Shown here one piece after another: positions 1-61,700 of a DNA stretch of 64,000 bases. Both the position numbers and the translations under genes were made by a program. Position 1 is the stretch's first letter. Each line of letters opens with the position of its first letter. Source of the stretch: Marsupella aquatica (Eukaryota; Plantae; Marchantiophyta); contig OZ316897.1 of NCBI GenBank assembly GCA_973895155.1, positions 9,261,832-9,325,831 of the forward strand. The letters run 5' to 3'. The notes beneath the pieces are model-generated. The model was not told the origin of the DNA, ran no database searches, and worked only from the letters and a program-made list of their open reading frames with translations.

Positions 1-1571
1 TGCCCAATGCCAGACGAGGACTCAGTTGAACATGTGCAGGATATGGGTGGGGAACCCATCATGCCCGGTTGTTTTCCCAGAGACCCAACTGCCAAAAGGA
101 CTTGGTAACCTGCCCAATGCCAGACAAGAATGGAGGTCACGGGTGGGAATGTCCTAACAGGGAAAGGACCAGCCATAGGAAAATTTGCGCATAAGACAGT
201 TTTACCCGAAGAAACTAGTTCCCAAACAGACTTGGTTGAAGAGAATCCTTGCTCGCTTTGCAGGTTTCATTTTCTCTTCTGATGGTTCAAACAGGGGGTT
301 CCTCACTTCTGGATATCATCCAGCCCACTGAAGGCAGTCTCTGAGCTGAAATGGTACCTTAAGTTCATTCTTGACTGCAAATCCAAATATATTCAAGCCA
401 TTATCTGAGACTAATGAGTTGGGACTTCAACAGTGAGGACCACCTTACGAATGAATAAGTTATCTTTGCATGGCTCACAGATAATGGGATGGACTTGTCA
501 TCATGTATGCCATTCCTGTACTCGTGTGATAGAAACTGACGCCATGATAGAAAGCACGGTGAGAGTGCTTGCTATTCCATATGTGTGCATGCAGCTTGAA
601 ACATTTGAATGTGGGTTGGTGCATTCGTTGTGTGGCAGAAGTAGGAGAGAAGTTGGAAGTTTTAATTCCTGTACAACGGCGATATACTGGATTCGATCCT
701 CACCTCTTTGGACCAGGAGGCGACGAGTGACATGAACTGTTTACGAGAGCCAACACCAATTTATCACGTAAAATTGGCGACATTGAGCACTCAATCATGG
801 GAATCCTTGGGAACCAACTCGGGCCCTTCAGAAATTGAACCCACATGTCATCCCACCTTGCATGCCACATGGCCTCCATCACTGTCTTAAATTGTCCTGT
901 TGAGTTGTGTCGATGGACCGAAACGTCCTTGGTACTTGCAGCAGATGCCTTGTCTTTAGTGTGAGCCACTTGGCATTTCACCCGGGAGGAGATTGCCCAC
1001 GGATTTGTAACTGGCCTTTCTTTCAGGTCATTTTTTAACACTTTTCACAGATGGTCAAAGGCTCTGACTTCTGACCCCAAGATCAAGCTACCAAGTGTTC
1101 GTCGCATTGATTAATAAAGGTAGTAGAGTCCAGAGGTATAACTGACGTGTGCAGTACTGCTTTATAAGAAACATAGCCTCATACTAATTGCCCGCGGCTG
1201 TCAAATGAGAACTAAAACTAGTCCAACCCACCCACTGCCATGATTGTCCAACGCATCCAGCGTGATAATCCAACCACTTCCATAATGCAATGCAAAGACT
1301 AGTGGTAATATTAGAGAATATACAACTGAAAGTACTGAGACCACGATGTGAAATGTCCCCAAGGTCCTTTGGCAAAATAAATATCCCTACAGGAACCAAT
1401 AGCAACACAAATAACTGTTCTCTGGAACTGAAATCAATTGAAAATGTGAGATGTAATCTCAAATTAACCCCACCTTCTTTTCAGAAGCACACGGATTCCT
1501 TGAGCTGGCGAGATTCCTCGTATAGAATTTTGGTACCCTGCAACTCCTTGAATGAGACAAACAAATGAAAC

Positions 1572-4185
1572 TCAACGACCCTCTGAAACTGACTCTGGAT
1601 CTGCATCTTCAATCTCCTGGTACTCGTCCGTTTTAGATTCAGTCCGAGGATACAACAAATAATGTTGTACGATGAATATAACATCAAATATAACCGATTC
1701 CTGCACACCAAGGTTCCACCGCATTCAAGGTTACAAACTAACGGAAATCACTTTCTACGGAGTCACAGACACATCTCATTGCACAATTCTGAATCAAACA
1801 GAAGAAAAAAATGTCAGACCTACATGAAAATTACGAAAACTAATCTAGATTATGACGTACCAGAGACAAGCCAATCTTGCCAACATTTCCGGTAAAATTT
1901 TGAAGAGAATCTGCACTCGAAAACAGGCATGGAGATCAGTTCTGTTCCACGAATCGGTCAGGAAAGTGAACCCCGAAGAAGCAAATCCTACGTGAAAAAG
2001 AAAGACCGAAGCAGAATTTAAAATCCAAACAAGAATGTACATACGTTGATCAATAGATAGAACACCCATTTGAGCGAAGTTTGAAATGCCTCCGGTTATG
2101 TCAAGAATGATGTTCCCTATACTCCAACCAACAGTGCTCTTCCTTTGATAATTAAAATACACCTGCCAAACCATGAAGCATGAGCACGAGACTTCATATT
2201 TTGGTGCATAGGCTTACTACTGCTAGAGGTATGATGGTGAATCGTGTAAGAAGTGAAGCCCTGGAACATTTAGCACCCAAAATTTCGTGGTCGTGGGGTG
2301 TTTGTGTACCTGTGGTATATACTTAATTGAAGTAAAAATCAGCTGTATTATACTGCAACGCACAGGATCAAAATTTGTCAGCACGTCACACGGGTCACCA
2401 AAATTCCTTCTTCAGTTATACTGGACTGATGATTTTCAGCTTTAAGCAGTAGAATTCCTATCACTGAAGACAATTCCCCAACACAGTCAGGTGAAGCAAA
2501 GCAACTCAGGTTCTGAGATAAAGAATGAGAGCTCTTACTTGAAGGCAGACACAAGCCACAGCCAATCACCCTTCGGCCAGGCAATGAAAAAAAGAATAAG
2601 AGCTGAGACCCATGCGATGGTCGTAAGGGAAGTGGCAGTTTGAGAAGCCTTCTGGCCTCCTCTCTGAGAATAACAAACTACAGATCAGTACTCTAGCTTC
2701 GAATAGCTGTCTGGGATGGACCAGAATACGCCACTACTGACGTACCAGTCCCCGTTCACTGCAAGCTCCACTCAACTACTAGACGGAACATCTACATGGG
2801 ACCCAGATTTTACCTACTTTCACTTCTTCGTCTTCCTTGAATATTCTCCTCTCCTGTATGTCTAACGGTAAAGAAAGATTTCAATACTTCAAATATGCAC
2901 CACACATACTTTGGGTGTTTGAGAAACCTACTCGGTCAACCAGACAGATGAAAACATTTCTACGAGTGACTTGGGACCGTTGCCGTGCACGCTGATTTGC
3001 AGGAAACCCAATTGTTGACTTCAATACAGAAAATAAGTACGAAGCCGAGCACATGAAACCGATGAACAGCCCATATTGAGCTTGGAGAACTCACATCATA
3101 GATCACAACTTGGTAGAGTGTGAAGCTTGTGAGAATTACAGCGTGTATCGAAAATGCGACATCACTAGGCGAAACTGGAATGAGCTGTTGCATTTGACAA
3201 GAAAATTAGCTTAGTCTGCCATGTAGTACGTAGTATGTATATATACGACAGAAACAGTTCTCATAGGACGACATTATAAAACAAAGACCCAGGATTCTCT
3301 CATATTGTTCGAGTCCCATGGACTCAAATGTGAGTCAATCAATAAACGATCCATCTGCCTTTGTACTCAAATTGCGTCAATTCATCAAGCAATCGATCTG
3401 TCATAAACTGTGAGTAAATCAATCAATCACAATCTACCTATGACTAAATGTCAGTTAGTCCATTGCGCATGTGAAAATCCAAAAATCAACAGCTTCAATT
3501 CCCATCAAAGAATGTTGATTCAAACCTCAGTTTCACCATACTTCTCACGGTATTGTTGTTGAACAACAGGGCTGAAGTACAGAGATGCATTATAAATCAA
3601 GTACGTCGAGTGCTTTGTGAAATTCAGAAGTAGGAAGTCCAAAGTGAGCCCGGTAACACTGCATGGATTTTCAAAAGGACCATAATTCAGTGAAAATAGG
3701 TCAGTTTGTAATAATTCAGGAGACCAAACCCGACGATTCACCCAATAGATTTATATGCCGTCCACCACGCTGGTCGCGCCATGTGCAACGCTTTGTCTCC
3801 AGGACCAGACGCATGTAGCTGACAGAGTCAGGTAAACTCAGAAGCGTTCCAGCAGAAGATCAATCAATTAGCTAGAAGGACGAAAGGAGGAAGGTCAGGA
3901 ACGAGAGCGGTGAGGACACAATCAATTAGTCAATTCCATCGCCACCATAGGGCTTCGTGAATGTCAGAAGTACTGGAGAAAGATTCCCAACTACAGAAAC
4001 GAGGCATCACAATGCACAGCTAAATGCTTCAGAGCGATGGCGTTGAGAACGAACCTTTTCCGTTTGTAATTGAGGAGGACCTGAGGGTAGAAACTGATGG
4101 ACCACACGATGAAAGCAAACCAGCCCAGGGACAGATACAGATAGTACAAGGCCGAGGAATGCCACTCGGCGTCGTCCCCCACCAT
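1572..4185 (-). CDS. CTNS: Cystinosin homolog (PQ-loop lysosomal/vacuolar cystine transporter), 8 exons, ~272 aa
   Basis: Exons 4185-4055, 3658-3526, 3184-3095, 2663-2539, 2352-2310, 2162-2045, 1910-1861 and 1700-1572 join with GT-AG introns into one frame (819 nt). Motifs: [70 protein letters not shown] (two PQ loops). Confidence 0.95.
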
Positions 4186-6619
4186 CTCTGCTTTCGAAAA
4201 ACTCTGCCGTGCGCTTCTCTCTCTGTTTTCCTGCCACTCACTCACTCACCAACAAAGCAATTGTTGTAGTTTCTCGTTTGTGACAAGAGAAAGGTTTCAA
4301 GGTCGGTGGACTGTTTCGGCTCCCAGACCTTCTCTTTGGCTCTCACAAGGCTTCTTCATATCTGCCAGAACCAATTTTTCGTTGCTTTTTCCTACCCTTT
4401 CTCCATCTCTCGCTGAAGGGTCCTGTGCATTCATTTCATCTGGTCATCTTCCATCCAACACAGAGAGATTCGAGGCACGCCACTTTCTTCTTCCAGATTC
4501 TGCGGGCTGTAGCTGTAAATAATAACTAAACTATATTTCCTTCACGTTTCTGCTTCATTGAGAAACGATTTTTACTCAGGGTGTCTTTACAGGAAGTCTC
4601 GGCCATTTATTGTCCTCTTTTCATTCTCATTTGCTTTAAACCACCACTGTCCATATAAAAGGAGAAGTGTTCAAGACTCCACTCTCCTCTAGTCTGAGAC
4701 TTTGCTCCATAATTTCAGGAAAAGACTAAAAATGGTTCAGAAAAAGTATACTAAAAGTTTCACCTGGTTTTGTCATGGACAGTGGCGCTTTAAGATTAAA
4801 TCTGGACCCTAGAATAAGTGAAAAAAAAGCTGCAATTCGCAGTACAAAACTATTATTCCTTCTCGGTTCTCTATTGTATCTGGACCCCTTCAATGAGTGA
4901 ATATGGCTACAATTGGCTTTAAAAGAAAGGGGACCCCATTAGTCTAGTTGAGAAGCTGTTATTCCGGTTCCTGTTTCATTGAGAAACTATTATTACTCAG
5001 GGTGACTTCCCAATAAGTCTTGGCCCACTGCCTTCTCTTTATTCACTCCAACTGTAAAATCTGGATTGCATACTTTGTGCAAATAGGTATAGTGAATGAA
5101 AACGGCTGCAATTGGCTTTACAAGAAGCGGTCCATTACTGTAGTAGTTGGGAAACACATATTCTTTCCGCTTCTCTAAGATAAAGCTGGACTTATCCCAA
5201 CCATTAGATAAGCCAAAAGAGTGCTCTGAATGAAGGAAAAAATTGCCTATTGTTGCATCTTGCCTGAGCCTTGTTTCCCTCAATTGCACTCCCTCCTCAC
5301 TGAATGATTTTTTAAACAGGCTGGTCCAGGCTTGGCACTTTTCTGCATGTGCGGAACCCATTTTCACTCCTTATACTCCCTTCACTTCACTCCTCTGCCT
5401 GCCATGCTCCCTCTTGGCGTCATGAACTGGGCAGTCCCAGAATGAACCCATGCTATTTCTGAAGTAACACTATTTCCTTGTACATAAAATGAAATAATAC
5501 TAACTATATTTAGAGTGAATAACTACCTTCTTCAATTATTAGCGTTACAAGGAAATAGCGTTAGCTCAAATAGCTCAAAAAGAAAGCCTAGTGTTGTATT
5601 CAAGTTTTGGTGAAGGAGTTTGCAAAAGTCAGAGCTTCAGGGCATTCTAATCAGGAATTTGGTGATGTGGCTCATGAGGCATTTCCAATTCAATCCAATA
5701 CTCAAATAGCATATTTTGTATTAGGACACCCCACTTCACCAGCCCTATTAGTGAACATTATGAGAGAGGCCTGGACACAATATTTGGGAGTGTTTTAGGT
5801 TGCCAAAATGGGTGCCTGGATACATTGCAATAGAGTGCCTCGGTCAGAGTGGCATACACTCTATTGCACTTGATCTTCTATTTGACCAGAAACCACTTTT
5901 TCCTCTGGAAGCCTTTTATTGCTTTTAGAAACCCATGCTTTTTTTTAGAGACAGTAGTTTACACTAGTTGTAACATATTAATGCCAAGTTATACCACATG
6001 GTGTGTCTACTTTACAACAAGTACACCTGTTAATTTATACCATAAAATTTGGCTAGTTCAAACCACCTGCACCGTGCACTGTTTAATCGTGAATACATTG
6101 TTATTAGTATTAGTGGTCCTTTTGGAAACACACAGAAATTAAAGTTACTTTTGGGAAATTTAGATGTTCACCTTAATTAGTGGTACCCATGCTAATTGTA
6201 ACCCTATTTGGTTACCAAGACTCTTTGCGGTGAAGAATCAGATTGTTTCCATAAATGGTAAGTGATTACTATAACAAGTGCAACAAGAGAGCAAACCTGA
6301 CTGTCCTGTTAGAGGGGGTCCATTTGGAAACTTTGAAATTTATAGGGCTCATCAGCACAAGTTCTCCCAATCACAAGGGATTAAAGCTGATCTCCAGGCT
6401 ACTTAATCCTACATGGCATATGTTTAGCCAGTGACAGTGTCCACTGCTTGGATCCTGTCCGTCTTGGGTTTCATGGTAAATGTCATGGGCGGATGGGGTG
6501 TTACATCAAGATTGGCGGAGAGGAAAGCATTGGTTGCTTTTGGTGGGAAGGCAGGCGAGGTTTAAATTGCCTGAAAACTTTTCTCTTCAACACAAACTCC
6601 ACCCCTATCTTTTTCCTTT

Positions 6620-7003
6620 GAACACAACACTTGGGCGTTGTGTTCAAAAATGGATTTTTCTGGTCACCATAAGAAAAAGTATTTTTTCTTCAAACACAAT
6701 GTCATTTTAACACAGCGCCCGGGCATTGTGTTTGACTATTGGCGTTGTGTTCGAGATTTGACCCTAAACTATTCTACGTTGAGGACAAATAGTAAAAAAT
6801 TCAAGAATCATATGTCAATGTCAATATTCAAACACAACGTCAATATTTGAACACAATGCCCATTTTCAAACACAATACCCTACAAATACAAAAAATGAAA
6901 AGTAACACATAGTTAAAACTTGAATACAATGCCCCGGGCGCACTATTCAAATAGAGCGCCCCATGGCCTACTATTCAAATCCAACGCCATGGCGTTGTGT
7001 TCA
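6620..7003. repeat. Cluster of short palindromic AACACAA/TTGTGTT repeats, probable non-autonomous DNA-transposon remnant
   Basis: Repeated gaacacaac..ggcgttgtgttc-type units in both orientations, e.g. 6620-6645, 6709-6732, 6923-6947. Confidence 0.5.
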
Positions 7004-7012
7004 GGGGAAGAC

Positions 7013-7451
7013 GGTAGTGGGGTACACCCAAATCCCTTTCTCACTTGGAAAACTTTTGTGGGGGAAAAAGATGTCCCCCACCTTGTCAGACAGCTCAAGG
7101 GAACAAGCTAGGCAGCCAAGGTTCAAGGTTCATAAAGCACTGTTGCAAACCACAACTGGCTTTGAGGCAAAACTCAGAACCTGCAAACTCCATAAAGAGT
7201 GTATATTGTTGGATTTCAGTTGACAATAGGGTGTCTTGAATTCAATTCAATTCAATTCAATTCAAAGCCATTGGTTCAAAGGAGGATCTAGTTTTGTCCC
7301 GCACTTTCAGTCCTCATTGGCTTCTTTTGACAGCAGGCATTAGTTGCTCAATAGAGGGCTAAGGCACTAACTACTCTAGTCGGACTAAGACAGTTGGTTT
7401 TAGCGTTACAGTTTTCCAAGTGACAAAGGGATTTGGGTGTACCCCACTACC
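7013..7451. mobile_element. MITE-like element with 41-bp terminal inverted repeats
   Basis: 7013-7053 (ggtagtggggtacacccaaatccctttctcacttggaaaac) is the reverse complement of 7411-7451 with 1 mismatch. Interior is non-coding. No clear TSD. Confidence 0.6.
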
Positions 7452-9289
7452 AAGTGACAAACTTACTTCAGAACTCTAGCAGGCTTTTGTAGCTCAGTAG
7501 GGCTTTAGTTCTTTTGTCATTATTTGTGACCATGGGGCTGGTTGGCTCTTGCATGTTTTGACTCTGGTCAATGTGGTTTTTCTTTTCTTTTCCTCCCTTT
7601 ATTGGGTTTCTTGCCTATCTCAAGGTATGGCGACTTTTGTTATGTGGCGGTGTTTTATCAATTTTGGTTTATCCTAACTAGGTTTTATGAAACAAAAAAA
7701 AGCCAAAAAAAAAACTTCCCCCTGTCGTATGCCCAGGAAATGCTCAAATGGTCTGCGTTGTGTCTCCTCACACTAAGATACAACTGCACAGGGTGACCGG
7801 GGGGGGACCGACGAAAAACGTGAAGTGTGACCGGACTGACCGATCTTCGGGGAAACTGGGGACACAGTCCGGTACTGTACACTGTACTGGAGACTTGCGC
7901 AAGTTGGGAACCGAGTTAGGGACAGAGCTGAAGGCCCTCTGTCCCCTCGGGAATATGGAAACCCTAATCAAACCATAGGGGCGGTCGATTTCGGCCCCGT
8001 ACCAACGATAGTACGGCATATCAGTTCAGTACTGTACAAAAGACGTAACGCGAAGTCGACGTTCACCGATGAGTAAAACTGGTATGGCGTCAAGAAAAGG
8101 AAAAGAGGTACGGTAATTGCAAACATTCACTTCAACAGGTTCTGGGAACAACTAATTAATTATTGAAATTTGAAAGCCTCAGATAAATTTATTTATTTAT
8201 TCTTGGAAGGGGGCACTACTACTTTACTTATGAGAAGTCAAACCCAATTTAATTTAAGTACCGAAACCCCAAGAAATCAATTTATCTTCCTATATAATCA
8301 CAAACAAAACTTTACGGCTACTGTCTAGAGTGAAACCTCTAGACCTTAACTCAAATAAAGATAAAATATATAATGACTCTGAATAAGACAAATTAAAAAG
8401 GTAAAAAACTTCAGGTATGCAAAGATAACGGAAAAGAGTATAGGTTTTTTTTCAATTTTTTTTGTTTTTAATTCTATTTAAGTTCAAGGAACGGGTAGTT
8501 CAGGCTAGTATTGTAGGAATGTTCTGATCATTGTGATGCAAAACACTGATATATCAGTGTAGTGCTGAAACAGATACCCTGATTTCTTGCACAGTTCACA
8601 TGGACCCCAAAGAAACTGTATTTTTTTGCTCAGATGATACAAGTTACACTAGATAGTAAAACATGACAATAAAACAAGATAGCCCATCTTTAAGAAATAG
8701 TACTTCTCTCAATATTAGACTAGTTAGAAAGCTCTTTCTTAACCAAGGCCAAATGAGAGGAAGAAGTACCATTTTGATTGAGTATCAAGGTATATATTGT
8801 TATATTGATGAGGAAGATGAAAATTTTTGGAATCCTGGAAAGTGTAGCGTGAGTAGGGTGTAAGAGTTGGAAATTCTTGGCTAATCTCAATTCTGAATGA
8901 ATTACACTTCAAAAGAAACGTTTCTTGTGGTCATGTGTATAATTTTGTCTGGAGTAACAACCTTATTCCCTCCCCAATTTGTGTATTGACTATCTCCTTT
9001 GAAAAGCAGGTGTCTATTGGAGTCACTAAAGGACAACAAAACTTGGGAGCTTGCATGTTAAATTGCTTGAGGGTCAACAAGTGGTGGACAATAAGTGAAT
9101 TTACAAACTGAAGAATCAAAACACAGGAGGTGAATCAAAGGTCTACAAGGTTAGGTTGGTAATCACGCATGAGAAATGTGTGTATTACAATGAAATCTTC
9201 TCACCACTTGCTAAATACTCTGCAATATAACTATTGTGTGTATTTGTTGTTATGTTTGGTCTGTTACTAGATAAGATGAATGTTGTCAT

Positions 9290-10037
9290 AACTTTCCTCT
9301 ATGACACCTTGGAATATTTTCATGAGACAACCACTAGATTTTTGAGCTAGTCAAGATTAATGGTAAACTCAACCCGGTTGACGCCTTTACGAAAATGATT
9401 CCTTTGGAGAGTTTTTCTAGACACTGCGACATGTTGCAAGTTTTGCAATTGTGTCACAAGTAGGGTTTTCTTAACATTCGTTGTAATTATTGATATATTT
9501 TCTCCCTTATTCCCATGTATTAGGCTACGGTTTAGTTCTTGTTTGCTCTAGTAGAGAGGAGAAACCGGTTTGATTTTTGTCCAGAAGTTCCCGATGATGA
9601 ATCATATAGGATAGCATAATTACCCGGCTCCCCTATACCAGAGTCAAGGGAAGATTGTTAGGTGTTTACTCTTAGGTCTTAGGTTATGACATGTAACCAT
9701 AGTTAGGCTAATCATAGTTGGAGATGTGGTTAGGCTAAGTAAGTTGCACATTATATCCTAAGAGGTGTTTGCTTGGATAAGGGGAACTAATGCCTCATTG
9801 TTACAAAGCCACTTGAGAGATAAGGAGAGCTTACGTTGTGGAGACTTGATATGGCCGACAGGCGTACAGTTAAGTAAATCTCTCTTGTGTGTGCCTGTGA
9901 ACGTAGCCTCAAGGAGGTGAACCACATATTTCTTGTGTTGACCACTTGTTTTTTGAATGTGTCATGGGCTTACAGTTATGAATGTCGTTTATGCTCAACA
10001 TGACCGAGCCCAAATATCATTTTTCACTGACATAACA
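9290..10037 (+). mobile_element. Truncated Ty1/Copia retrotransposon: RNase H C-terminus, PPT and 3' LTR
   Basis: ~9353-9463 translates KINGKLNPVDAFTKMIPLESFSRHCDMLQV* (Copia RNase H end, NPAD.LTK-like). Purine tract aagggaaga precedes TG at 9656. Candidate LTR tgtta...taaca 9656-10037 (alternative end 10085). Confidence 0.75.
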
Positions 10038-10738
10038 CCTATTACAATTTTGTCTAAATCCTAGTCCAAATCGTGACCTATAACATTGTGCAAACCGGTT
10101 GTAGTAAGTAGTTTGTCCGCTGTAAGTCAATTGTTCATTGTGAAGTGTTGTCCCAAATCTATGAAGCTTCTGCCCCTGACTGCTTTCCTTTGCATTATTG
10201 TTGCAACTATTTTTTGTAAGTTTCTCAATCAGTTATTGCTAAGCAGATGCAAGAGGCAGTAGACTGTGACAACTGAAGGCAAGTGTGGACATTGAGCCAC
10301 AATGGCGACCGGCCGCAACAGCAAGATAAGCTTCTTTGTAAGTACGTGGTGCTTGAACTGAGAGGATTTGGGTTGAGTTTCTTTAGTTTATCATCTTGAT
10401 TAATTAAGTATAAGGTGATCAGCACTAACCCCACACAAGAACAATCATCTCATCCATAGAGCCATTCAGTAAACTGTCACTTAAATATGCTGAGTCTCTT
10501 TACTATCAGTTGTGCCTCATCTTTTAGAACCGTAACTTTCTTAAGCTTGGTCCATCCCGGCTTCAAGTTTGATAAAACTCACAAGTGTTTTATGACTAAA
10601 TGACTCGTATATTCGAGCCAGGGGATCAAACTTGATTGATATGTAACAAGACTTTACAACTACAGTAAATGACTCGTATATTTGAGCCTGAGTAATGAAT
10701 AAGTAGAATCAGTCAAGGGTAAGTGTCTATTATTAATC

Positions 10739-10774
10739 CCTGCATTTCCTGCATTTCCTGCATTTCCTGCATTT
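10739..10774. repeat. (CCTGCATTT)4 microsatellite
   Basis: Four direct 9-bp copies. Confidence 0.9.
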
Positions 10775-11863
10775 TCGTACAACTGTATCGTTGGGTGGAC
10801 CGAGCATATTGTTGGTACGGTAACTAAAACCTTCCTGTAAATTACGGCGCTGTGCCTGGTTGTTTACCTCTGGTTGTGGGTTGTGGGGGGCCAGGGCCTC
10901 CTGCCCGGCCGTCGTCGCAAGTTGCGCCGGGCAGTAGGACTGGTGATGCCGCAGCTCAGGGCACTCATCATCAAGCAAAGCACAATCCGCCGGAACAGTA
11001 CCCGAGCCGCCGGGAAACAGCCAACGCCGACTCGACGCGGCGGTTTCACGAGCGAGCTGCGTGTTGCCAGTTTCCCATGTGTCTCTCTGTCTCTCGTCGT
11101 TCGATCGTTTTTTCGCTCGCTCGTTCTTCGATGCGGAAGGAGTGAAGGAGTGGAGGAGTTCTCCACGGATGATGGCCCAGGGTTTCTTCTGTTGAGGAGA
11201 GAGAGAGAGAGAGAGAGAAGCAGACCAGGGATCGCGTCGGAGGTCGAGTCTGGGACGAATCATCAGTGTGTGTGGCTCTTGTTTCCCACTCGAAGCAGCA
11301 ATTGCGTGCAGAGAACTGTAGAGTAGTGACTAGAGAGAGGTCGAGCGAGGCTCGTGCGAGGCACGCGCAGAACTGATCGGTTCTGAGCGGGTTTTTGTGT
11401 GCCTCTGCTAAAACCCTGGGCGGGTTCTTGTGCCGCTGCTGCTGCTGCTGCCTCGACGGCGGTGCTGTCCTCTCTGACTCTTTTCACTCTACGGCGTAAT
11501 CCATCATTTTATCCCTAGACCCAACCCTGGCCTCCAGTGCTTTAGTGCTCTCCATGGTCACCGGAGAAGCTGTGTGATTGCTCGGAGTGTGAAGTTTGGG
11601 GCGGCTGGGTTTTTGCTCCTCTGGTAGTAAGCGAGGGATCTTGGCCGTTTGAGCCGTCGTGGCTGCTTGCTGACTCCTTTCCTCAAGCCAGGGAACAACG
11701 GAGATTTATGTGAATGCTTCCGTCGCATTTCTCCTTTTACGCGCAGCTCGTGTTGCTATCCACTTCTTCTCTCTCTTTGCTTTGGTCCTCGCCTTTTCCC
11801 TGGAGCGGTAGCGTGCGCTATACTAGACGCGACTATTCCATAGCCCGTGGCAGCTCGAGCGGC

Positions 11864-13217
11864 ATGGTAAGGATACCTAGATCATCTCTTCGTTTGACTC
11901 TGTGCTCGTGAGGTGACGATGGCATCCGGGGGGTTTGCGTACGATAGTGAAAGTTGTTGTCTGGGACGCGACACATATCTGCTGATCATTGGTTGTTCTA
12001 TAGATTGTGGTGGAGTGCGCTAAGCCCTGTCGCGTTCGAGGTTTTGCAGGGTTTTGTGCTTGGGAGGGATTTAGGGGATTATGCTAATGTGCTCATGGTC
12101 TGTGTACTTCTCAGGGGTCCGAAGCACTAAACCCGAGGGCCTATCCGCTTGCGGATTCGCAGCTGACAATCACGATCATGGACATCGTTCAGCAGGCGGC
12201 CAACTACCGGCAGCTTAAGAAGGGCGCCAATGAAGGTATTATTAGATTTATGGGCCCAGTCGTTAAACTCCATCTATCATCCTCTGCGGGGTGCAAATCT
12301 TGTGTTCTGCTAGATAGGTGCCGAAATTAACTTGCCTTCGAGACGTTTAACGTAGGTCTCTTCTCGAGATTACTTTGGTGGGAACTCTTGTCTTTGTCTA
12401 TAGCGTGTTGACTTGACATTGATTGGCTGACGCCAATGAATCGCTTGCTGCAGCTACCAAGACTCTCAACCGAGGCATTGCGGAGTTTGTTGTCATGGCA
12501 GCGGATACTGAACCCTTGGAAATCTTGCTCCACTTGCCTCTACTTGCCGAAGACAAGGTTGGTTCATTTCTTCGACTGGAGTTTAGTTTTTTATGCCAGT
12601 GTCGGCTAGGGTTTAGTCCTGCGGATGCTGGCTCTTGGGTTCAAGCATCATAAGTTTGTTATACTTTTGTCGGACTACTAAGCAGAGTATCTCGGATAAC
12701 AGCTGGTGTGTAACCTTGTTCACCCCGTTGGAGGTCTCTGTTAAAGTCTGTTCGGGTTAGGAAGGTTTATCGGTATTAGCTTGGATTAACATTGCATTCG
12801 CGTGATGTCATTTTGCTGTAGAACGTGCCGTACGTATTCGTTCCGTCCAAGCAAGCTCTGGGCAGAGCATGTGGGGTTTCAAGACCTGTGATTGCGTGCT
12901 CTGTCACATCGAACGAAGGAAGCCAATTGAAATCACAAATTCAGCAACTCAAGGTGGGTATCAATCTCTCGCTTGAATTAACATTATCACGCGTTTTTCA
13001 TTACGTGTGGTGATCCATTGATCGCGAGAGGCAGGGAGGTTGGTTGGAGTCGGTGTTATTTAGAAGTTGGAGTGAACAATCTCGCCTAGAACTGGAACGA
13101 CAGAAGGACACATTAGTCCTTTACAGAGTTTCCCGTTCGTAACATGTTGGGCAAGGATTTGACTCATGTGTTCGTTCCTTGTGTTTGCAGGATGCTATCG
13201 AAAGGCTGCTTATCTGA
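11864..13217 (+). CDS. SNU13: SNU13/NHP2L1 (15.5K) L7Ae-family K-turn-binding protein, 128 aa, 5 coding exons
   Basis: Exons 11864-11866 (ATG only), 12115-12235, 12454-12557, 12822-12953, 13191-13217 total 387 nt. Protein: [128 protein letters not shown]. Confidence 0.97.
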
Positions 13218-13373
13218 GCGGCTTCTGGTAGCTGAGAAGGTTGCTCGTGTTGTGCTGTTCTTAATAGACGTGTCCCCATGAGGATTTGCTCTTCAGTTGA
13301 TCCAGAGTGAGGCTCAAGCAAATGTTTTAAGATCGTCGGCTATATTTCTCTCGTAAGTTGTTTAGTTTCTTTG

Positions 13374-13458
13374 CACTGATGAGACGGTCATTACGGCGGA
13401 AGATGGCCCACTAGAGAGCCGTGCATGGCCGACTTTGTGGAATCTGGCCGTTGAGGTG
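13374..13458 (+). promoter_or_regulatory. Candidate kink-turn RNA element in SNU13 3' UTR region overlapping a 5' splice site
   Basis: C-stem CACU/GGUG, 3-nt bulge GAU, tandem G.A/A.G pairs, 8-bp NC stem GACGGUCA/UGGCCGUU. Donor-like AG|GTGAG at 13456. Confidence 0.55.
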
Positions 13459-16375
13459 AGCCTCTTGGTGAAGTGGATATCACCCAACATGTTGGGAGGA
13501 TTAATCTTGACCCTTGAGGTATTTTTGTGTTATTCTGTCTCGTTGGTTCATGGATGATGTGGTTTTGTTGCGCTGTAGAAGATGCATGCTAGAAATCGTT
13601 CGATCTTTTGGGATAGTGGAACGAATGGCTCTTATTTCATACCTTTCTCTGTATCTTCATTATAAACTTCAGACAGATCGACGGATTTCTCCACATCATG
13701 ATGTCGATCATCATAATGACTCATCGTGGAGGGACTTGGATTGGTCTTGTGCTGGTTGCTATCGTCGAAATGGAGACTGAGCAATGGGGTTTATCGATAC
13801 AGCCAACATTAGATTGATAGGATGTCGCTTTCATGGGATTGGTTTCACTTCATGCCTGATTTTGATTACGGTCTCACCAGCGTTTGCTTGTTGGTAAGTT
13901 CTTCACACCTGGAGTATTTGTCGCTTCTCAGGATGGTTCCACTAGCCCAATTCTTCTTGCGTGATACGGATGATTTTCCTCGAGGTTCTATTTCTTAGCA
14001 GTGGCCAATTGAACTGATGTCTGCTGCGCCATTGTTGTCATCAACTGGCGCTCTGCAATTCATGAGTGCAACCCTTGTAAATCCTTCATAGGATAACCAG
14101 ACCTGAAGTCCATTTATTAAAATTGTTTGGTGCAGAATGTGTCTGCGCTTTACAATGTCAGCATAGGGTCTGGAGTAAGGAGGTGTTTAGTTAAGTTGGC
14201 ATTGATTTTCTCCCATTTTGGAATCTTGCTGATGCTCGCACGAGGCAGAAAGACTTGTGAGTTAAATTGATTCTGTCCTTTTGTGGAAATATTCGAATCA
14301 TGGATTCCTGTCCGACCACTGTTTCTGACTGTCCTGGAAAAGAATGGCACCAAGTGGCGAGTCACGTGGTTGTGTTGGGTATCCACGCCTGACTTTAATG
14401 GGCATCCTTCTAGTGATGGCTAAAGACATCGTCGGATTCGCATGTATGCCTGTATTGGATTTCCTGGAAAGGGTCTTCGTCGAAGATGATGATTATCAAC
14501 TGTCCTCTTTCTTCCTAGCCGTGAAAGGGATATAACAATTTTTTAGAGTCACTGCAGATCTTGTTAGAGTTTCTACAATCTATATGGTATCCACTAACTC
14601 AGATTCGTCAGGTTCTTTCACCAGATCTTGCTCCCGGCTAGGACTCAACAGAAAGTAATATTCAAAGGTTATAGTGTATGCAAGGTTATATAGTAAGTAT
14701 AATTGATTGAAGGAGTTACTGAAATGAGGTTTTTCCTGAATTGGAATACATGCATTGGAAAGTAGTTTCAGTTGATTTGGATTCAATTATTTTGGTATAA
14801 TACGACAGTTTCTAGAACTGAGCAGATCGGGAAAAAAATGGATTTTAAGTGGGAGGTCTTGTTATTTTTAAAACTTTAAATTGTTCTCAGAGCAAAATGC
14901 ATTTCTCAAGAAATCATGTTAGATTCAGGCACATTACAGAATCAGATTTTATCTTTTTCTATGAATTTTATTTATTCATAACGCTGAACTTATCAGAGTC
15001 AGATTTAATTACATTCTATCCATTACATTTATTCAGAGCACAGAAAAGTTTGGGGTAGAAGGTGCACAATATATTCATTCATGGCATGGAAAGATTGTAG
15101 GTTCATATTTTATTTTCACTCTCAATTGCAAGTTTTCAGGGAGCTCCATGACATGTTTTGCTCACAATGCATTCAGTTGGCTATGAAATAATTGGTTTGG
15201 GTGCACTGTTGCTAATTATTTTGAATGCTGAATATCTCAATGGTGAGTTAACATAATGGGAAGAAATTCAAACATTTGAGTCATCTCAACACTCGGTCGA
15301 AAATGCTCATGCGAAAATCCATGCTAAGATAATTTATCAAGAAGTGTCATTAACTAAATAAGAAATGGCTTTGCTTGAGAAGAGGTACTCGATGTCCATG
15401 CTAAGCTACAGTAGCTAACCAATGAAGGAGTGTCGATATCTGATATTGTTCCCAATGAATGCATTTTGTATCAAAAATGATGCAGTTTGTGCACACTGCT
15501 TCTTTCATGATTGCAACAGAAGGATTTCTGCGGCTCTCTGCACTCTTTCATCATTAAACAAAAGGATCAAATTACTCCTCAATTCTATATAGAATTTTGA
15601 TGTTTCCACAGACCTTGGATGAAACTCTGAACTGCTTTCCTTACACATTCCACCCTGCTTAAGCAGCCTGAAATGAACCCATCCAATTGCTGCTGTATTC
15701 CCACGTAAACCCAGACAGATGGATGATTACACAATAGCACACCAGCAGGCACAAATTGACATTGACAGTTAATAGCTGGGCTCAAGAACTCACTGACGGG
15801 CAGCAATGGCAGTGTCAAGGTGATTGCCGGTCAGGAGAAGTTTAGTGGTGGGAAGGGCCTTGGAAACCACCCATAAGGGATGGATCACTAGTTGGAATAG
15901 GGTGTCCCAAAACAGTAAGTAAGGTTGGTCCAAGTACATAAAATGATTTTATGGCTACCTAAATACATTTTTAAAAAATAGTTTTATGGCTACCTAAATA
16001 CATGCCCCTTAAGGATCAGAAGTCCTAAAACTGACAGCCATAAGCCTTTGCTTGTGGCAGTGCTTTGGCACACCCTAATTGCGCGCCCCAAAGGATCCAA
16101 CGTCCAAAAAGTCATAACCATGAGACCTAACCATGAGACCTTTCATTACGGCAGTGCTAGGGCACCTCGTAATAGACACAGTACTTGCTGCAAACCTGTG
16201 TCACTCTATTTACGGGTCATACTTCAGACACAGTTAGAAAAGTCAAATACCTGGTTCAACCAGTGTCACTCTATTTACATGTCATACTTCGGCCAGAAAT
16301 ATAAAATGTATTGTCCGAGTCAAATGTGAGGCTTAGCAAAGTGCGGGGGTAAGTGCAGGTGGGTTGTCAAAATTC

Positions 16376-61189: not shown

Positions 61190-61700
61190 ATCCTAAACAT
61201 GACTCAACTCCTTTTTGGCTGAAGGACTCACGCTGTGAAAAGGACTAAACTCCTTTTTTTACTAAAGGACTCAATTCCTGAGAAGGACTTTACTCCTTTT
61301 TGTCATGTGTTAAGGACTTGAGTCCTTTCTGAGTGAAGGACTTAACTCCTTTTTGAGTGGAGGACTTGACTCCTTTCTGAAGGTCTGTAGTCCTTTTTTA
61401 ATGATGGACTTGAGTCCTTTCTGAGTGAAGGACTTGAGTCCTTTCCAAGTGAAGGACTTGAGTCCTTTATGAGTGAAGGACTTTACTCCTTTATGAGTGA
61501 AGGACTTGACTCCTTTTTGAGTGAAGGACTCATCTTCTTTCTGTGTGAAGGACTTGCAGACTCCTTTTTTATTGAAAACTTGACTCCTTTTGTGAGTGAA
61601 GGACTGATCTTCTTTCTGTGTGAAGGACTTCACTCCTATCTGATTGAAGGACTTTACTCATTTCCGTGTGAAGGGCTTGACTCCTTCCTATGTGAAGGCG
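61190..61700. repeat. ~24-bp minisatellite with internal palindrome (GAGTGAAGGACTTGAGTCCTTTCT)
   Basis: Roughly 20 degenerate copies. Core AAGGACT-TG-AGTCCTT is an inverted repeat. Confidence 0.9.

What the first reader, a model, noticed from the sequence alone, without database searches (positions are those of the whole stretch)
13374..13458. Kink-turn in the 3' region of SNU13 that sequesters a 5' splice site: candidate Snu13 autoregulatory circuit
Seen: 5'-CACU GAU GA GACGGUCA (13374-13390) ... UGGCCGUU GA GGUG-3' (13445-13458). This gives a 4-bp C-stem, a 3-nt R-R-U bulge, tandem sheared G.A pairs and an 8-bp NC stem, about 160 nt past the stop codon. The 3' strand is also a donor-like AG|GUGAG (G13456). 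A second donor-like GUAAGU lies at 13353 and a pyrimidine-rich acceptor uuuuguugcgcuguAG ends at 13578. Established: Snu13/15.5K binds K-turns (U4 5' stem-loop, box C/D). Its L7Ae-family relative yeast Rpl30 represses its own splicing through a K-turn at a 5' splice site. Introns more than ~50 nt past a stop promote NMD in plants. Inference: Snu13 binds its own pre-mRNA and changes 3'-UTR donor use or intron retention to control its own level. I know of no description of this for plant SNU13. An orphan box C/D-like RNA (CUGAUGA...UUGA, ~80 nt) is an alternative reading.
Basis: partly seen in the sequence, partly recalled or inferred. Interest (0 to 1): 0.85.

Follow-up and report, generated by a model that had tools for sequence, protein, structure and literature searches.

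The report
Conserved kink-turn in SNU13 3' UTR
The messenger RNA of a bryophyte's SNU13 gene, whose protein binds kink-turn RNA folds, carries a kink-turn-like element behind its stop codon that is also preserved in a very distant plant. This suggests that the protein senses its own mRNA, but there is no support for the proposed splice-site mechanism.

Summary
The motif is in the sequence exactly as described, 157 nt after the SNU13 stop codon. Taken alone it is only mildly unusual: the fold z-score is -0.74, and minimal K-turn look-alikes occur about once per 500 nt. Conservation makes it real. Seven metatranscriptome contigs of a distant plant carry the same element in their SNU13 3' UTR. 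Their third-codon identity to the window is 44% and the UTR flanks are at noise level (39-46%). The two K-turn strands are 16/17 and 13/14 identical. The C stem, the GAU bulge and both GA dinucleotides are invariant. The three changes lie in the NC stem and keep pairing, or fall at position 3b.3n. The motif meets the published Snu13/15.5K sequence determinants.

Other plants (Sphagnum and two unnamed plants, probably mosses) carry a different, strongly conserved K-turn-like hairpin just after the SNU13 stop.

The splicing part is not supported. The donor-like sites are not conserved, and no junction appears in any RNA contig. In the distant plant the unspliced RNA contigs retain the element.

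Best reading (about 0.5): a Snu13-sensing feedback element in the 3' UTR, with the downstream mechanism unknown. I found no description of this in the searched literature.

The parts
11865..11867 (+). SNU13 start codon, the last three bases of exon 1; an intron follows directly (11868-12114)
   Evidence: Sequence. Spliced contig of run X1 joins 11865/67 to 12114/15.
12115..12235 (+). SNU13 exon 2
   Evidence: GT..AG joints in X1 contigs. Translation matches plant SNU13 proteins.
12454..12557 (+). SNU13 exon 3
   Evidence: Joints. Pfam PF01248, E 9e-07.
12822..12953 (+). SNU13 exon 4
   Evidence: Joint. Pfam PF01248, E 6.5e-09. Best solved relative is human 15.5K, 1e7k_A, E 5e-19.
13191..13217 (+). 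Coding part of the last exon, ending in TGA at 13215-13217
   Evidence: Sequence. Loose ends of X1 contigs join exon 4 to 13191.
13374..13377 (+). C-stem 5' strand (CACU); pairs with 13455-13458
   Evidence: Sequence. Identical in L009, where the stem extends to 7 pairs.
13378..13380 (+). Three-nucleotide bulge GAU (purine at position 2, U at position 3)
   Evidence: Sequence. Invariant in L009. Matches the Snu13 preference in PMC1874613.
13381..13382 (+). GA of the bulged strand (G1b, A2b), candidate sheared pairs with 13453-54
   Evidence: Sequence. Invariant in L009.
13383..13390 (+). NC-stem 5' strand; pairs with 13445-13452
   Evidence: Sequence. L009 differs at 13385 (C to U, giving U.G) and 13390 (A to G, giving G.U); both changes keep pairing.
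13391..13444 (+). Variable 54-nt interior between the two strands
   Evidence: Only 46% identical to L009. RNA contig depth in the related species drops about 40-fold between about 13400 and 13418.
13445..13452 (+). NC-stem 3' strand
   Evidence: Sequence. In L009, U13452 is G, so 3b.3n goes from G.U to G.G.
13453..13454 (+). GA of the non-bulged strand (G2n, A1n)
   Evidence: Sequence. Invariant in L009.
13455..13458 (+). C-stem 3' strand (GGUG)
   Evidence: Sequence. Invariant in L009.
13353..13358 (+).
   Evidence: Present. Not conserved in L009. X1 and X2 contigs run through it.
13456..13461 (+). Donor-like GUGAGC overlapping the C-stem 3' strand; no evidence of use
   Evidence: Present. 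L009 has GUGUUG and seven unspliced contigs.
13563..13578 (+).
   Evidence: Present. No joint.
13535..13547 (+). Downstream stretch that can pair over 13 positions with 13375-13387, competing with the K-turn fold in silico
   Evidence: RNAfold MFE of 13218-13620.

Best explanation
The 85-nt stretch 13374-13458 is a conserved cis-element of the SNU13 3' UTR. Its two ends form a kink-turn of the kind that Snu13/15.5K binds in U4 snRNA and box C/D RNAs.

The most likely function is negative feedback. When free Snu13 is in excess, it binds and folds this K-turn on its own (pre-)mRNA, probably in the nucleus, and lowers the output of productive mRNA.

Shown:
- The gene is SNU13.
- The motif is present.
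- Its core is conserved across a very deep divergence.
- The element is retained, unspliced, in the RNA contigs of one lineage.

Inferred:
- Snu13 is the binding protein.
- Binding is regulatory.
- The downstream step is nuclear retention or decay, or interference with 3'-end formation near the element, rather than splicing.
For: 1. The gene is SNU13.

2. The same element sits 76 nt after the stop in seven contigs from seven samples of another plant (L009-L014, L025).
- CDS third-position identity to the window is only 44%.
- UTR flanks are 39-46% identical, which is alignment noise.
- 13373-13389 is 16/17 identical and 13445-13458 is 13/14 identical.
- The local alignment z-score is 4.4, with 1 of 200 shuffles as good, for the first block alone.

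3. The invariant part is exactly the K-turn core: C stem, GAU bulge and both GA dinucleotides. The three changes lie in the NC stem. Two keep pairing and one is at 3b.3n.

4. The core meets the Snu13/15.5K determinants in PMC1874613: a 3-nt bulge closed by a helix, U at bulge position 3, a purine at position 2, tandem GA, and a stable helix II.

5. A different K-turn-like hairpin with a UAU or UGU bulge follows the SNU13 stop within 45-100 nt in Sphagnum and two other plants. It is the best-conserved part of those downstream regions (z 6.8-15.5).

6. Another plant transcript, L045, has a strong K-turn-like motif 18 nt after the stop (2 of 300 shuffles as good).

7. Precedents exist in the L7Ae family: archaeal L7Ae (PMC5539422, PMC6298567) and yeast L30 (cited in PMC1874613).

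8. By the folding rules in PMC6298567, 3b.3n = G.U and -1b.-1n = U.G do not favour folding without protein. That suits a protein sensor.
Against: - No binding or expression experiment exists.
- Only two lineages carry this exact element, so there is no statistical covariation.
- Thermodynamic folding in UTR context does not favour the two helices. Forcing them costs 12.2 kcal/mol in the window and 6.5 in L009. The isolated 85-mer folds no better than its shuffles.
- In RNA contigs of a related species, depth falls about 40-fold between about 13400 and 13418. Most mRNAs there may therefore end before the 3' strand.
- Camelina, an Amborella paralogue and a marine alga show no convincing K-turn after the stop.
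- The organism behind L009 is unknown.
Confidence: 0.5

Rival explanations
1. A conserved 3'-UTR element with some other job, such as a polyadenylation or stability signal, or a site for another protein such as eL30, eL8 or NHP2. On this view the K-turn likeness does not reflect Snu13 binding.
For: - Conservation shows selection but does not name the ligand.
- Contig depth in the related species drops inside the element, which could point to a role in 3'-end formation.
- In-context folding prefers other pairings.
Against: - The invariant bases are exactly those of a K-turn core, including the unpaired GAU and both GA dinucleotides.
- U at bulge position 3 and a purine at position 2 fit Snu13/15.5K, whereas yeast L30 prefers C or A (PMC1874613).
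- The host gene is SNU13 itself, and other lineages carry other K-turn-like motifs at the same place.
Confidence: 0.2
2. An orphan box C/D-like small RNA, or a snoRNP-forming element, housed in the 3' UTR and processed from it.
For: - C-box-like CUGAUGA at 13376-13382.
- About 80 nt between the two strands' ends.
- A terminal stem.
Against: - The D box is UUGA here and UGGA in L009, not CUGA.
- No C'/D' boxes are present.
- The interior, where a guide would lie, is only 46% conserved.
- No Rfam family matches, even at E up to 10.
- In L009 the element is part of long contigs that also hold the CDS.
Confidence: 0.12
3. One reading: the K-turn hides the donor at 13456 (or changes use of the donor at 13353), so that Snu13 controls removal of a 3'-UTR intron ending at 13578 and thereby NMD.
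For: - Donor-like and acceptor-like sequences are present.
- Yeast RPL30 and human NOP56/SNORD86 work in comparable ways (PMC1874613; PMC11028025).
Against: - Neither donor is conserved: GUAAGU is absent and GUGAGC becomes GUGUUG in L009.
- All seven L009-type contigs are unspliced.
- X1 and X2 contigs show no 3'-UTR joint although three coding introns are seen.
Confidence: 0.07
4. A chance motif with no function.
For: - Fold z-score of -0.74.
- Loose K-turn look-alikes are common.
- 8% of shuffles of the UTR score as well.
Against: Both strands are conserved in a plant with saturated neutral sites.
Confidence: 0.06

Closest known systems
Archaeal L7Ae autoregulation through a K-turn in the 5' leader of its own mRNA (PMC5539422, PMC6298567)
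   Same: A protein of the L7Ae family faces a K-turn in its own mRNA. The K-turn sequence is of a kind that should need the protein in order to fold.
   Different: - There the K-turn sits in the 5' UTR and occludes the ribosome binding site, giving translational control in a prokaryote-type system.
- Here it lies in the 3' UTR of a spliced eukaryotic mRNA, and the mechanism is unknown.
- Binding is not tested here.
Yeast Rpl30 binding a K-turn in its own pre-mRNA (as cited in PMC1874613)
   Same: A eukaryotic L7Ae/L30-family protein recognises a K-turn in its own transcript.
   Different: - The L30 K-turn includes the 5' splice site of a coding intron and has a protruding A or C.
- Here the protruding base is U (Snu13 type).
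- The overlap with a donor-like sequence is not conserved, and no splicing is seen.
Human NOP56 / SNORD86 snoRNP autoregulation (Lykke-Andersen 2018, as summarised in PMC11028025)
   Same: The expression of a box C/D snoRNP protein is sensed through a K-turn-containing RNA element inside its own pre-mRNA.
   Different: - SNORD86 is a full box C/D snoRNA in an intron, and it steers alternative splicing towards an NMD isoform.
- The element here has no D box, lies in the terminal exon, and shows no alternative junction.
U4 snRNA 5' stem-loop, the natural Snu13/15.5K site (PDB 1e7k)
   Same: - Same layout: C stem, a 3-nt purine-purine-U bulge on the 5' strand, tandem GA, and an NC stem capped on the inside.
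- The 3' strand reads GA followed by GG.
   Different: - U4 has a 2-bp NC stem with a pentaloop.
- Here the NC stem has 8 pairs and encloses a variable 54-nt insert.
- The element sits in an mRNA, not an snRNA.
SECIS elements (SBP2-bound K-turn-like motifs in 3' UTRs)
   Same: An L7Ae-family-type motif with tandem GA in a 3' UTR.
   Different: - SECIS has a larger internal loop and an AUGA quartet, and it serves in-frame UGA recoding.
- SNU13 has no in-frame UGA.
- From my own knowledge, land plants lack the selenocysteine machinery.

Membership tests
Kink-turn of the Snu13/15.5K-binding type | A canonical helix (C stem) closing the bulge with at least one pair | tested here: met
   Four pairs, 13374-77 with 13455-58. 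Seven pairs in L009.
Kink-turn of the Snu13/15.5K-binding type | A three-nucleotide bulge with U at position 3 and preferably a purine at position 2 | tested here: met
   GAU at 13378-80, identical in L009. The rule comes from PMC1874613.
Kink-turn of the Snu13/15.5K-binding type | Tandem G.A / A.G pairs next to the bulge | tested here: met
   GA at 13381-82 and 13453-54 in the right register, invariant in L009. The sheared geometry itself cannot be tested here.
Kink-turn of the Snu13/15.5K-binding type | An NC helix with at least two Watson-Crick pairs after the non-canonical pairs | tested here: met
   G.U followed by seven pairs. Changes in L009 keep the pairing.
Kink-turn of the Snu13/15.5K-binding type | A kinked fold and binding by Snu13 | not testable with these tools
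   Needs EMSA, FRET, probing or CLIP. RNAfold cannot model K-turns and does not favour the helices in context.
Box C/D snoRNA | C box RUGAUGA near the 5' end | tested here: inconclusive
   CUGAUGA: the first base is C, not a purine.
Box C/D snoRNA | D box CUGA near the 3' end | tested here: not met
   UUGA in the window, UGGA in L009.
Box C/D snoRNA | A match to a curated family, or a conserved guide with C'/D' boxes | tested here: not met
   No Rfam hit at the gathering score, nor at E up to 10, on the + strand of the element. The interior is 46% conserved.
Box C/D snoRNA | Accumulates as a discrete small RNA | not testable with these tools
   No small-RNA data were available. The only reads tool gave contigs.
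L7Ae-family autoregulatory K-turn (L30 / L7Ae type) | A K-turn located in the regulator's own mRNA | tested here: met
   It lies 157 nt after the SNU13 stop, on the sense strand, and at the same place in L009.
L7Ae-family autoregulatory K-turn (L30 / L7Ae type) | The K-turn overlaps a functional signal (5' splice site or ribosome binding site) whose use it blocks | tested here: not met
   The donor-like overlap is not conserved, and no junction was seen.
L7Ae-family autoregulatory K-turn (L30 / L7Ae type) | The protein binds the element and lowers its own expression | not testable with these tools
   Needs experiments.
SECIS element | It serves an in-frame UGA and carries an AUGA quartet with an apical AAR motif | tested here: not met
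   The exon translations contain no in-frame UGA. A 3-nt bulge replaces the large internal loop.

The most novel reading that the evidence does not exclude
Plant SNU13 genes carry an ancient Snu13-sensing K-turn switch just behind the stop codon. It has been kept since before the split of the lineages sampled here.

The partner strand has been exchanged over time: it lies downstream in this bryophyte and the L009 plant, and upstream in Sphagnum and its allies. Binding of excess Snu13 to the nascent transcript decides between a productive 3' end and an unproductive, retained or read-through RNA. This would resemble U1A control of its own polyadenylation more than L30-type splicing control.
Probability: 0.3. 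Interest if true: 0.8.

Novelty: new variant of a known kind. Interest (0 to 1): 0.62.

Why it matters
Snu13 nucleates both the U4 snRNP and all box C/D snoRNPs, so its free level couples splicing to ribosome biogenesis. How eukaryotes set that level is not known.

A conserved K-turn in its own 3' UTR would extend the L7Ae-family habit of self-regulation (archaeal L7Ae, yeast L30, human NOP56) to Snu13 and to plants, in a new position on the mRNA. It gives a short, mutable element (two GA dinucleotides and one U) with which the feedback can be tested directly in model bryophytes.

It also supplies natural Snu13-responsive 3'-UTR modules for plant synthetic biology.

Tried and rejected
**Exon joining.** All searches used single exons by reference, or database proteins.

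**Searches that led nowhere**
- The first full-length query picked from the representative search (P0002) was a chimeric Prunus gene model and found only itself.
- The one metagenome DNA scan, using the 5' strand plus two interior bases, gave 23 loci. Of the 22 I read, only L025 is real, and it is the same species as L009. The others are chance matches without SNU13 upstream.
- L032 is labelled as a human-gut metagenome contig. I left it unread.
- A covariance model built from the window and L009 found no further copy in any fetched locus.
- Fern genome loci (Adiantum, Ceratopteris) came back without DNA.

**Leads that stayed unconfirmed**
- A K-turn-like candidate in the fern-like transcript L044 has an A, not a U, at bulge position 3. 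It could not be confirmed as a homologue.
- The shared blocks AUGAUGGG and GGCUUUGACUGA between L045 and Camelina lie at matching distances from the stop. The alignment is not significant (z 1.3), and Camelina lacks a C stem.
- Homology between the downstream-partner and upstream-partner forms of the K-turn is suggestive by eye, but MAFFT aligns them differently. I do not claim it.
In L009 the competing pairings lie elsewhere, so a conserved switch is not shown.

**Readings and tools set aside**
- SECIS and coding readings were rejected. There is no in-frame UGA, and the conservation pattern is not codon-like.
- Complex prediction was not used because it cannot take RNA.

Full report
**Gene and coordinates.** The + strand of 11.7-13.7 kb holds a five-exon SNU13 gene.
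- The ATG at 11865-67 ends exon 1. The other exons are 12115-12235, 12454-12557, 12822-12953 and 13191 onward, with TGA at 13215-17.
- Contigs of run X1 are RNA of a related species, about 90% alike. They carry the three joints 11867/12115, 12235/12454 and 12557/12822, and their loose ends join exon 4 to 13191.
- Exons 3 and 4 hit Pfam PF01248.
- Exon 4 is closest to human 15.5K/SNU13, chain 1e7k_A.
Searches used single exons by reference and database proteins.

**The observation.**
- C stem: 13374-77 with 13455-58, 4 pairs, the inner one U.G.
- Bulge: GAU at 13378-80.
- GA dinucleotides: 13381-82 and 13453-54.
- NC stem: 13383-90 with 13445-52, 8 pairs, two of them G.U.
- The motif starts 157 nt after the stop.

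**Is it more than chance on this sequence alone?** Only weakly.
- The 85-mer folds into the two helices, but no better than its shuffles (z -0.74).
- My own scanner finds about 255 loose K-turn look-alikes (C>=3, NC>=3) in the window, against 263 in shuffles.
- For C>=4 and NC>=8, shuffles give 0.75 per window.
- Apart from this site, all such hits lie in a 24-nt tandem repeat at 61.3-61.7 kb.
- With a score that ignores 3b.3n and allows either orientation, 8% of shuffles of the first 300 nt of the UTR do as well.

**Finding relatives.** The protein is too conserved to pick relatives by name.
- I used exon 4 to reach database proteins. I then used two full-length-type queries and fetched the contigs that encode the closest unnamed proteins.
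- Protein P0023 is encoded on six short JGI contigs (L009-L014). A seventh, L025, came from the DNA pattern scan.
- All seven carry a clear copy of the element 76 nt after the stop.

**How far apart are the two plants?**
- Third codon positions are 44% identical, close to the floor seen among all pairs here.
- In the MAFFT alignment of the UTRs, the flanks and the interior of the element are 39-46% identical.
- By contrast 13373-13389 is 16/17 identical and 13445-13458 is 13/14 identical.
- The local alignment score stands 4.4 sd above shuffles for the first block alone.
- The C stem, the GAU bulge and both GA dinucleotides are invariant.
- The changes are C13385 to U (C-G becomes U.G), A13390 to G (A-U becomes G.U) and U13452 to G (3b.3n goes from G.U to G.G). 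In L009 the C stem grows to 7 pairs.
- With two sequences this is not statistical covariation. It is, however, the pattern expected of a protein-bound K-turn: an invariant core with a helix that tolerates pair-preserving change.

**Fit to Snu13.** PMC1874613 reports the following for Snu13p/15.5K.
- It binds K-turns with a 3-nt bulge closed by tandem G.A and A.G pairs.
- It strongly prefers U at bulge position 3 and binds better with A or G at position 2.
- It needs a closing pair in helix I.
- It makes no further sequence demand on helix II beyond stability.

The element meets all of these. PMC6298567 gives folding rules: 3b = C or 3n = G, and -1b.-1n = C.G, favour folding without protein. 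The window has G.U and U.G, which suits a site that folds only when bound.

**Other lineages.** Downstream of the SNU13 stop, Sphagnum (L002-L007; cluster member P0301 is named Sphagnum), L001 and L015-L020 share a 35-45-nt hairpin.
- Its layout is NC strand, GA, a 3-bp C stem, a variable loop, C stem, a UAU or UGU bulge, GA, NC strand.
- It is the best-conserved block of those regions.
- Its pairing is kept, including a C-G to U.G change, but no pair changes on both sides.
- Some of these contigs run kilobases past an intron-free ORF, so they may be DNA of intronless gene copies rather than mRNA.
- L045 has a strong motif 18 nt after the stop, with a UAU bulge and a U.U at 3b.3n (2 of 300 shuffles as good).
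- Camelina, an Amborella paralogue, L008 and a marine alga show nothing convincing.
- K-turn-like elements with a purine-U bulge end therefore recur behind SNU13 stops in several, but not all, plant lineages.

**The splicing idea.**
- GUAAGU at 13353 has no counterpart in L009, and GUGAGC is GUGUUG there.
- All seven L009-type contigs are unspliced and extend 164-357 nt past the element.
- In the related species, X1 and X2 contigs are collinear over 13189-13400 and 13201-13461, with no joint.
- Contigs hide rare isoforms, so this shows lack of support, not absence.

**An unresolved point.**
- X1 depth is about 1040-1080 up to about 13417. It is 24 in 13418-13518 and 2 beyond. The deep contig ends at 13400.
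- This hints that in that species most mRNAs end inside the element's interior, so the K-turn could form only on nascent or read-through RNA.
- Contig depth is a poor measure, and the low-depth X2 contig spans both strands.

**Folding in context.**
- RNAfold prefers other pairings: 13375-87 with 13535-47, and 13388-99 with 13448-59.
- Forcing the K-turn helices costs 12.2 kcal/mol in the window and 6.5 in L009.
- This fits a protein-dependent switch but does not prove one.
- The competing pairings are not at matching places in the two species.

**Known families.**
- Rfam has nothing here.
- The D box is not met, so this is not a box C/D snoRNA by definition.

**Literature.**
- Full-text searches found self-regulation for archaeal L7Ae, yeast L30 and human NOP56/SNORD86.
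- They found none for SNU13 in any eukaryote. The 2024 AtSNU13 paper does not mention one.

**Verdict.**
- The K-turn and self-recognition idea is supported by conservation.
- The splice-site mechanism is not supported.
- It is a new variant of a known kind of circuit and is worth a bench test.

Noticed in passing
window 13668-13717, minus strand: A weak box C/D-like stretch (AUGAUGA ... CUGA, about 50 nt) about 450-500 nt downstream of SNU13 on the opposite strand. Its Rfam sR5 match scores 14 bits against a gathering score of 40 (E 0.93), so it may be chance.
   Followed up: partly
window 61282-61698 and 61201-61301: A tandem array of about 17 copies of a 24-nt unit, next to 2.4 copies of a 43-nt unit. 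Its self-complementary GA-containing units produce spurious K-turn-like hits.
   Followed up: partly
window 11868-12114: The first SNU13 intron starts directly after the ATG, so exon 1 contributes only the start codon. A (GA)n run (about 11195-11220) and a (CTG)n run (about 11437-11452) lie upstream of the ATG.
   Followed up: no
window 13375-13387 with 13535-13547: A 13-position complementarity (four of the pairs G.U) between the C-box-like strand and a downstream stretch. It dominates the predicted fold of the UTR. In L009 the same strand is instead complementary to the sequence just upstream (L009 860-869 with 874-882).
   Followed up: partly
L002 and L003 (JGI peat-moss contigs, 12-15 kb): Sphagnum-type SNU13 sits as an uninterrupted ORF in the middle of long contigs. 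Cluster member P0309 (the same cluster as the 148-aa P0216) sits on a 412-kb contig. Sphagnum therefore seems to have an intronless SNU13 copy, while the window gene has four introns.
   Followed up: no
L044 913-952 and L002 4611-4649: A U-rich block downstream of the stop is conserved between a fern-like transcript and Sphagnum (local alignment z 5.6). Its function is unknown.
   Followed up: no
L045 2206-2263 and L050 (Camelina) 2437-2479: Two short shared blocks, AUGAUGGG and GGCUUUGACUGA, lie at matching distances after the SNU13 stop. L045 forms a good K-turn-like fold. In Camelina a GAAU repeat expansion disrupts the C stem. The overall alignment is not significant.
   Followed up: partly
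protein P0002 (Prunus armeniaca, NCBI): This gene model fuses a PPR-like N-terminus to the last 52 residues of SNU13. It is probably an annotation chimera.
   Followed up: no
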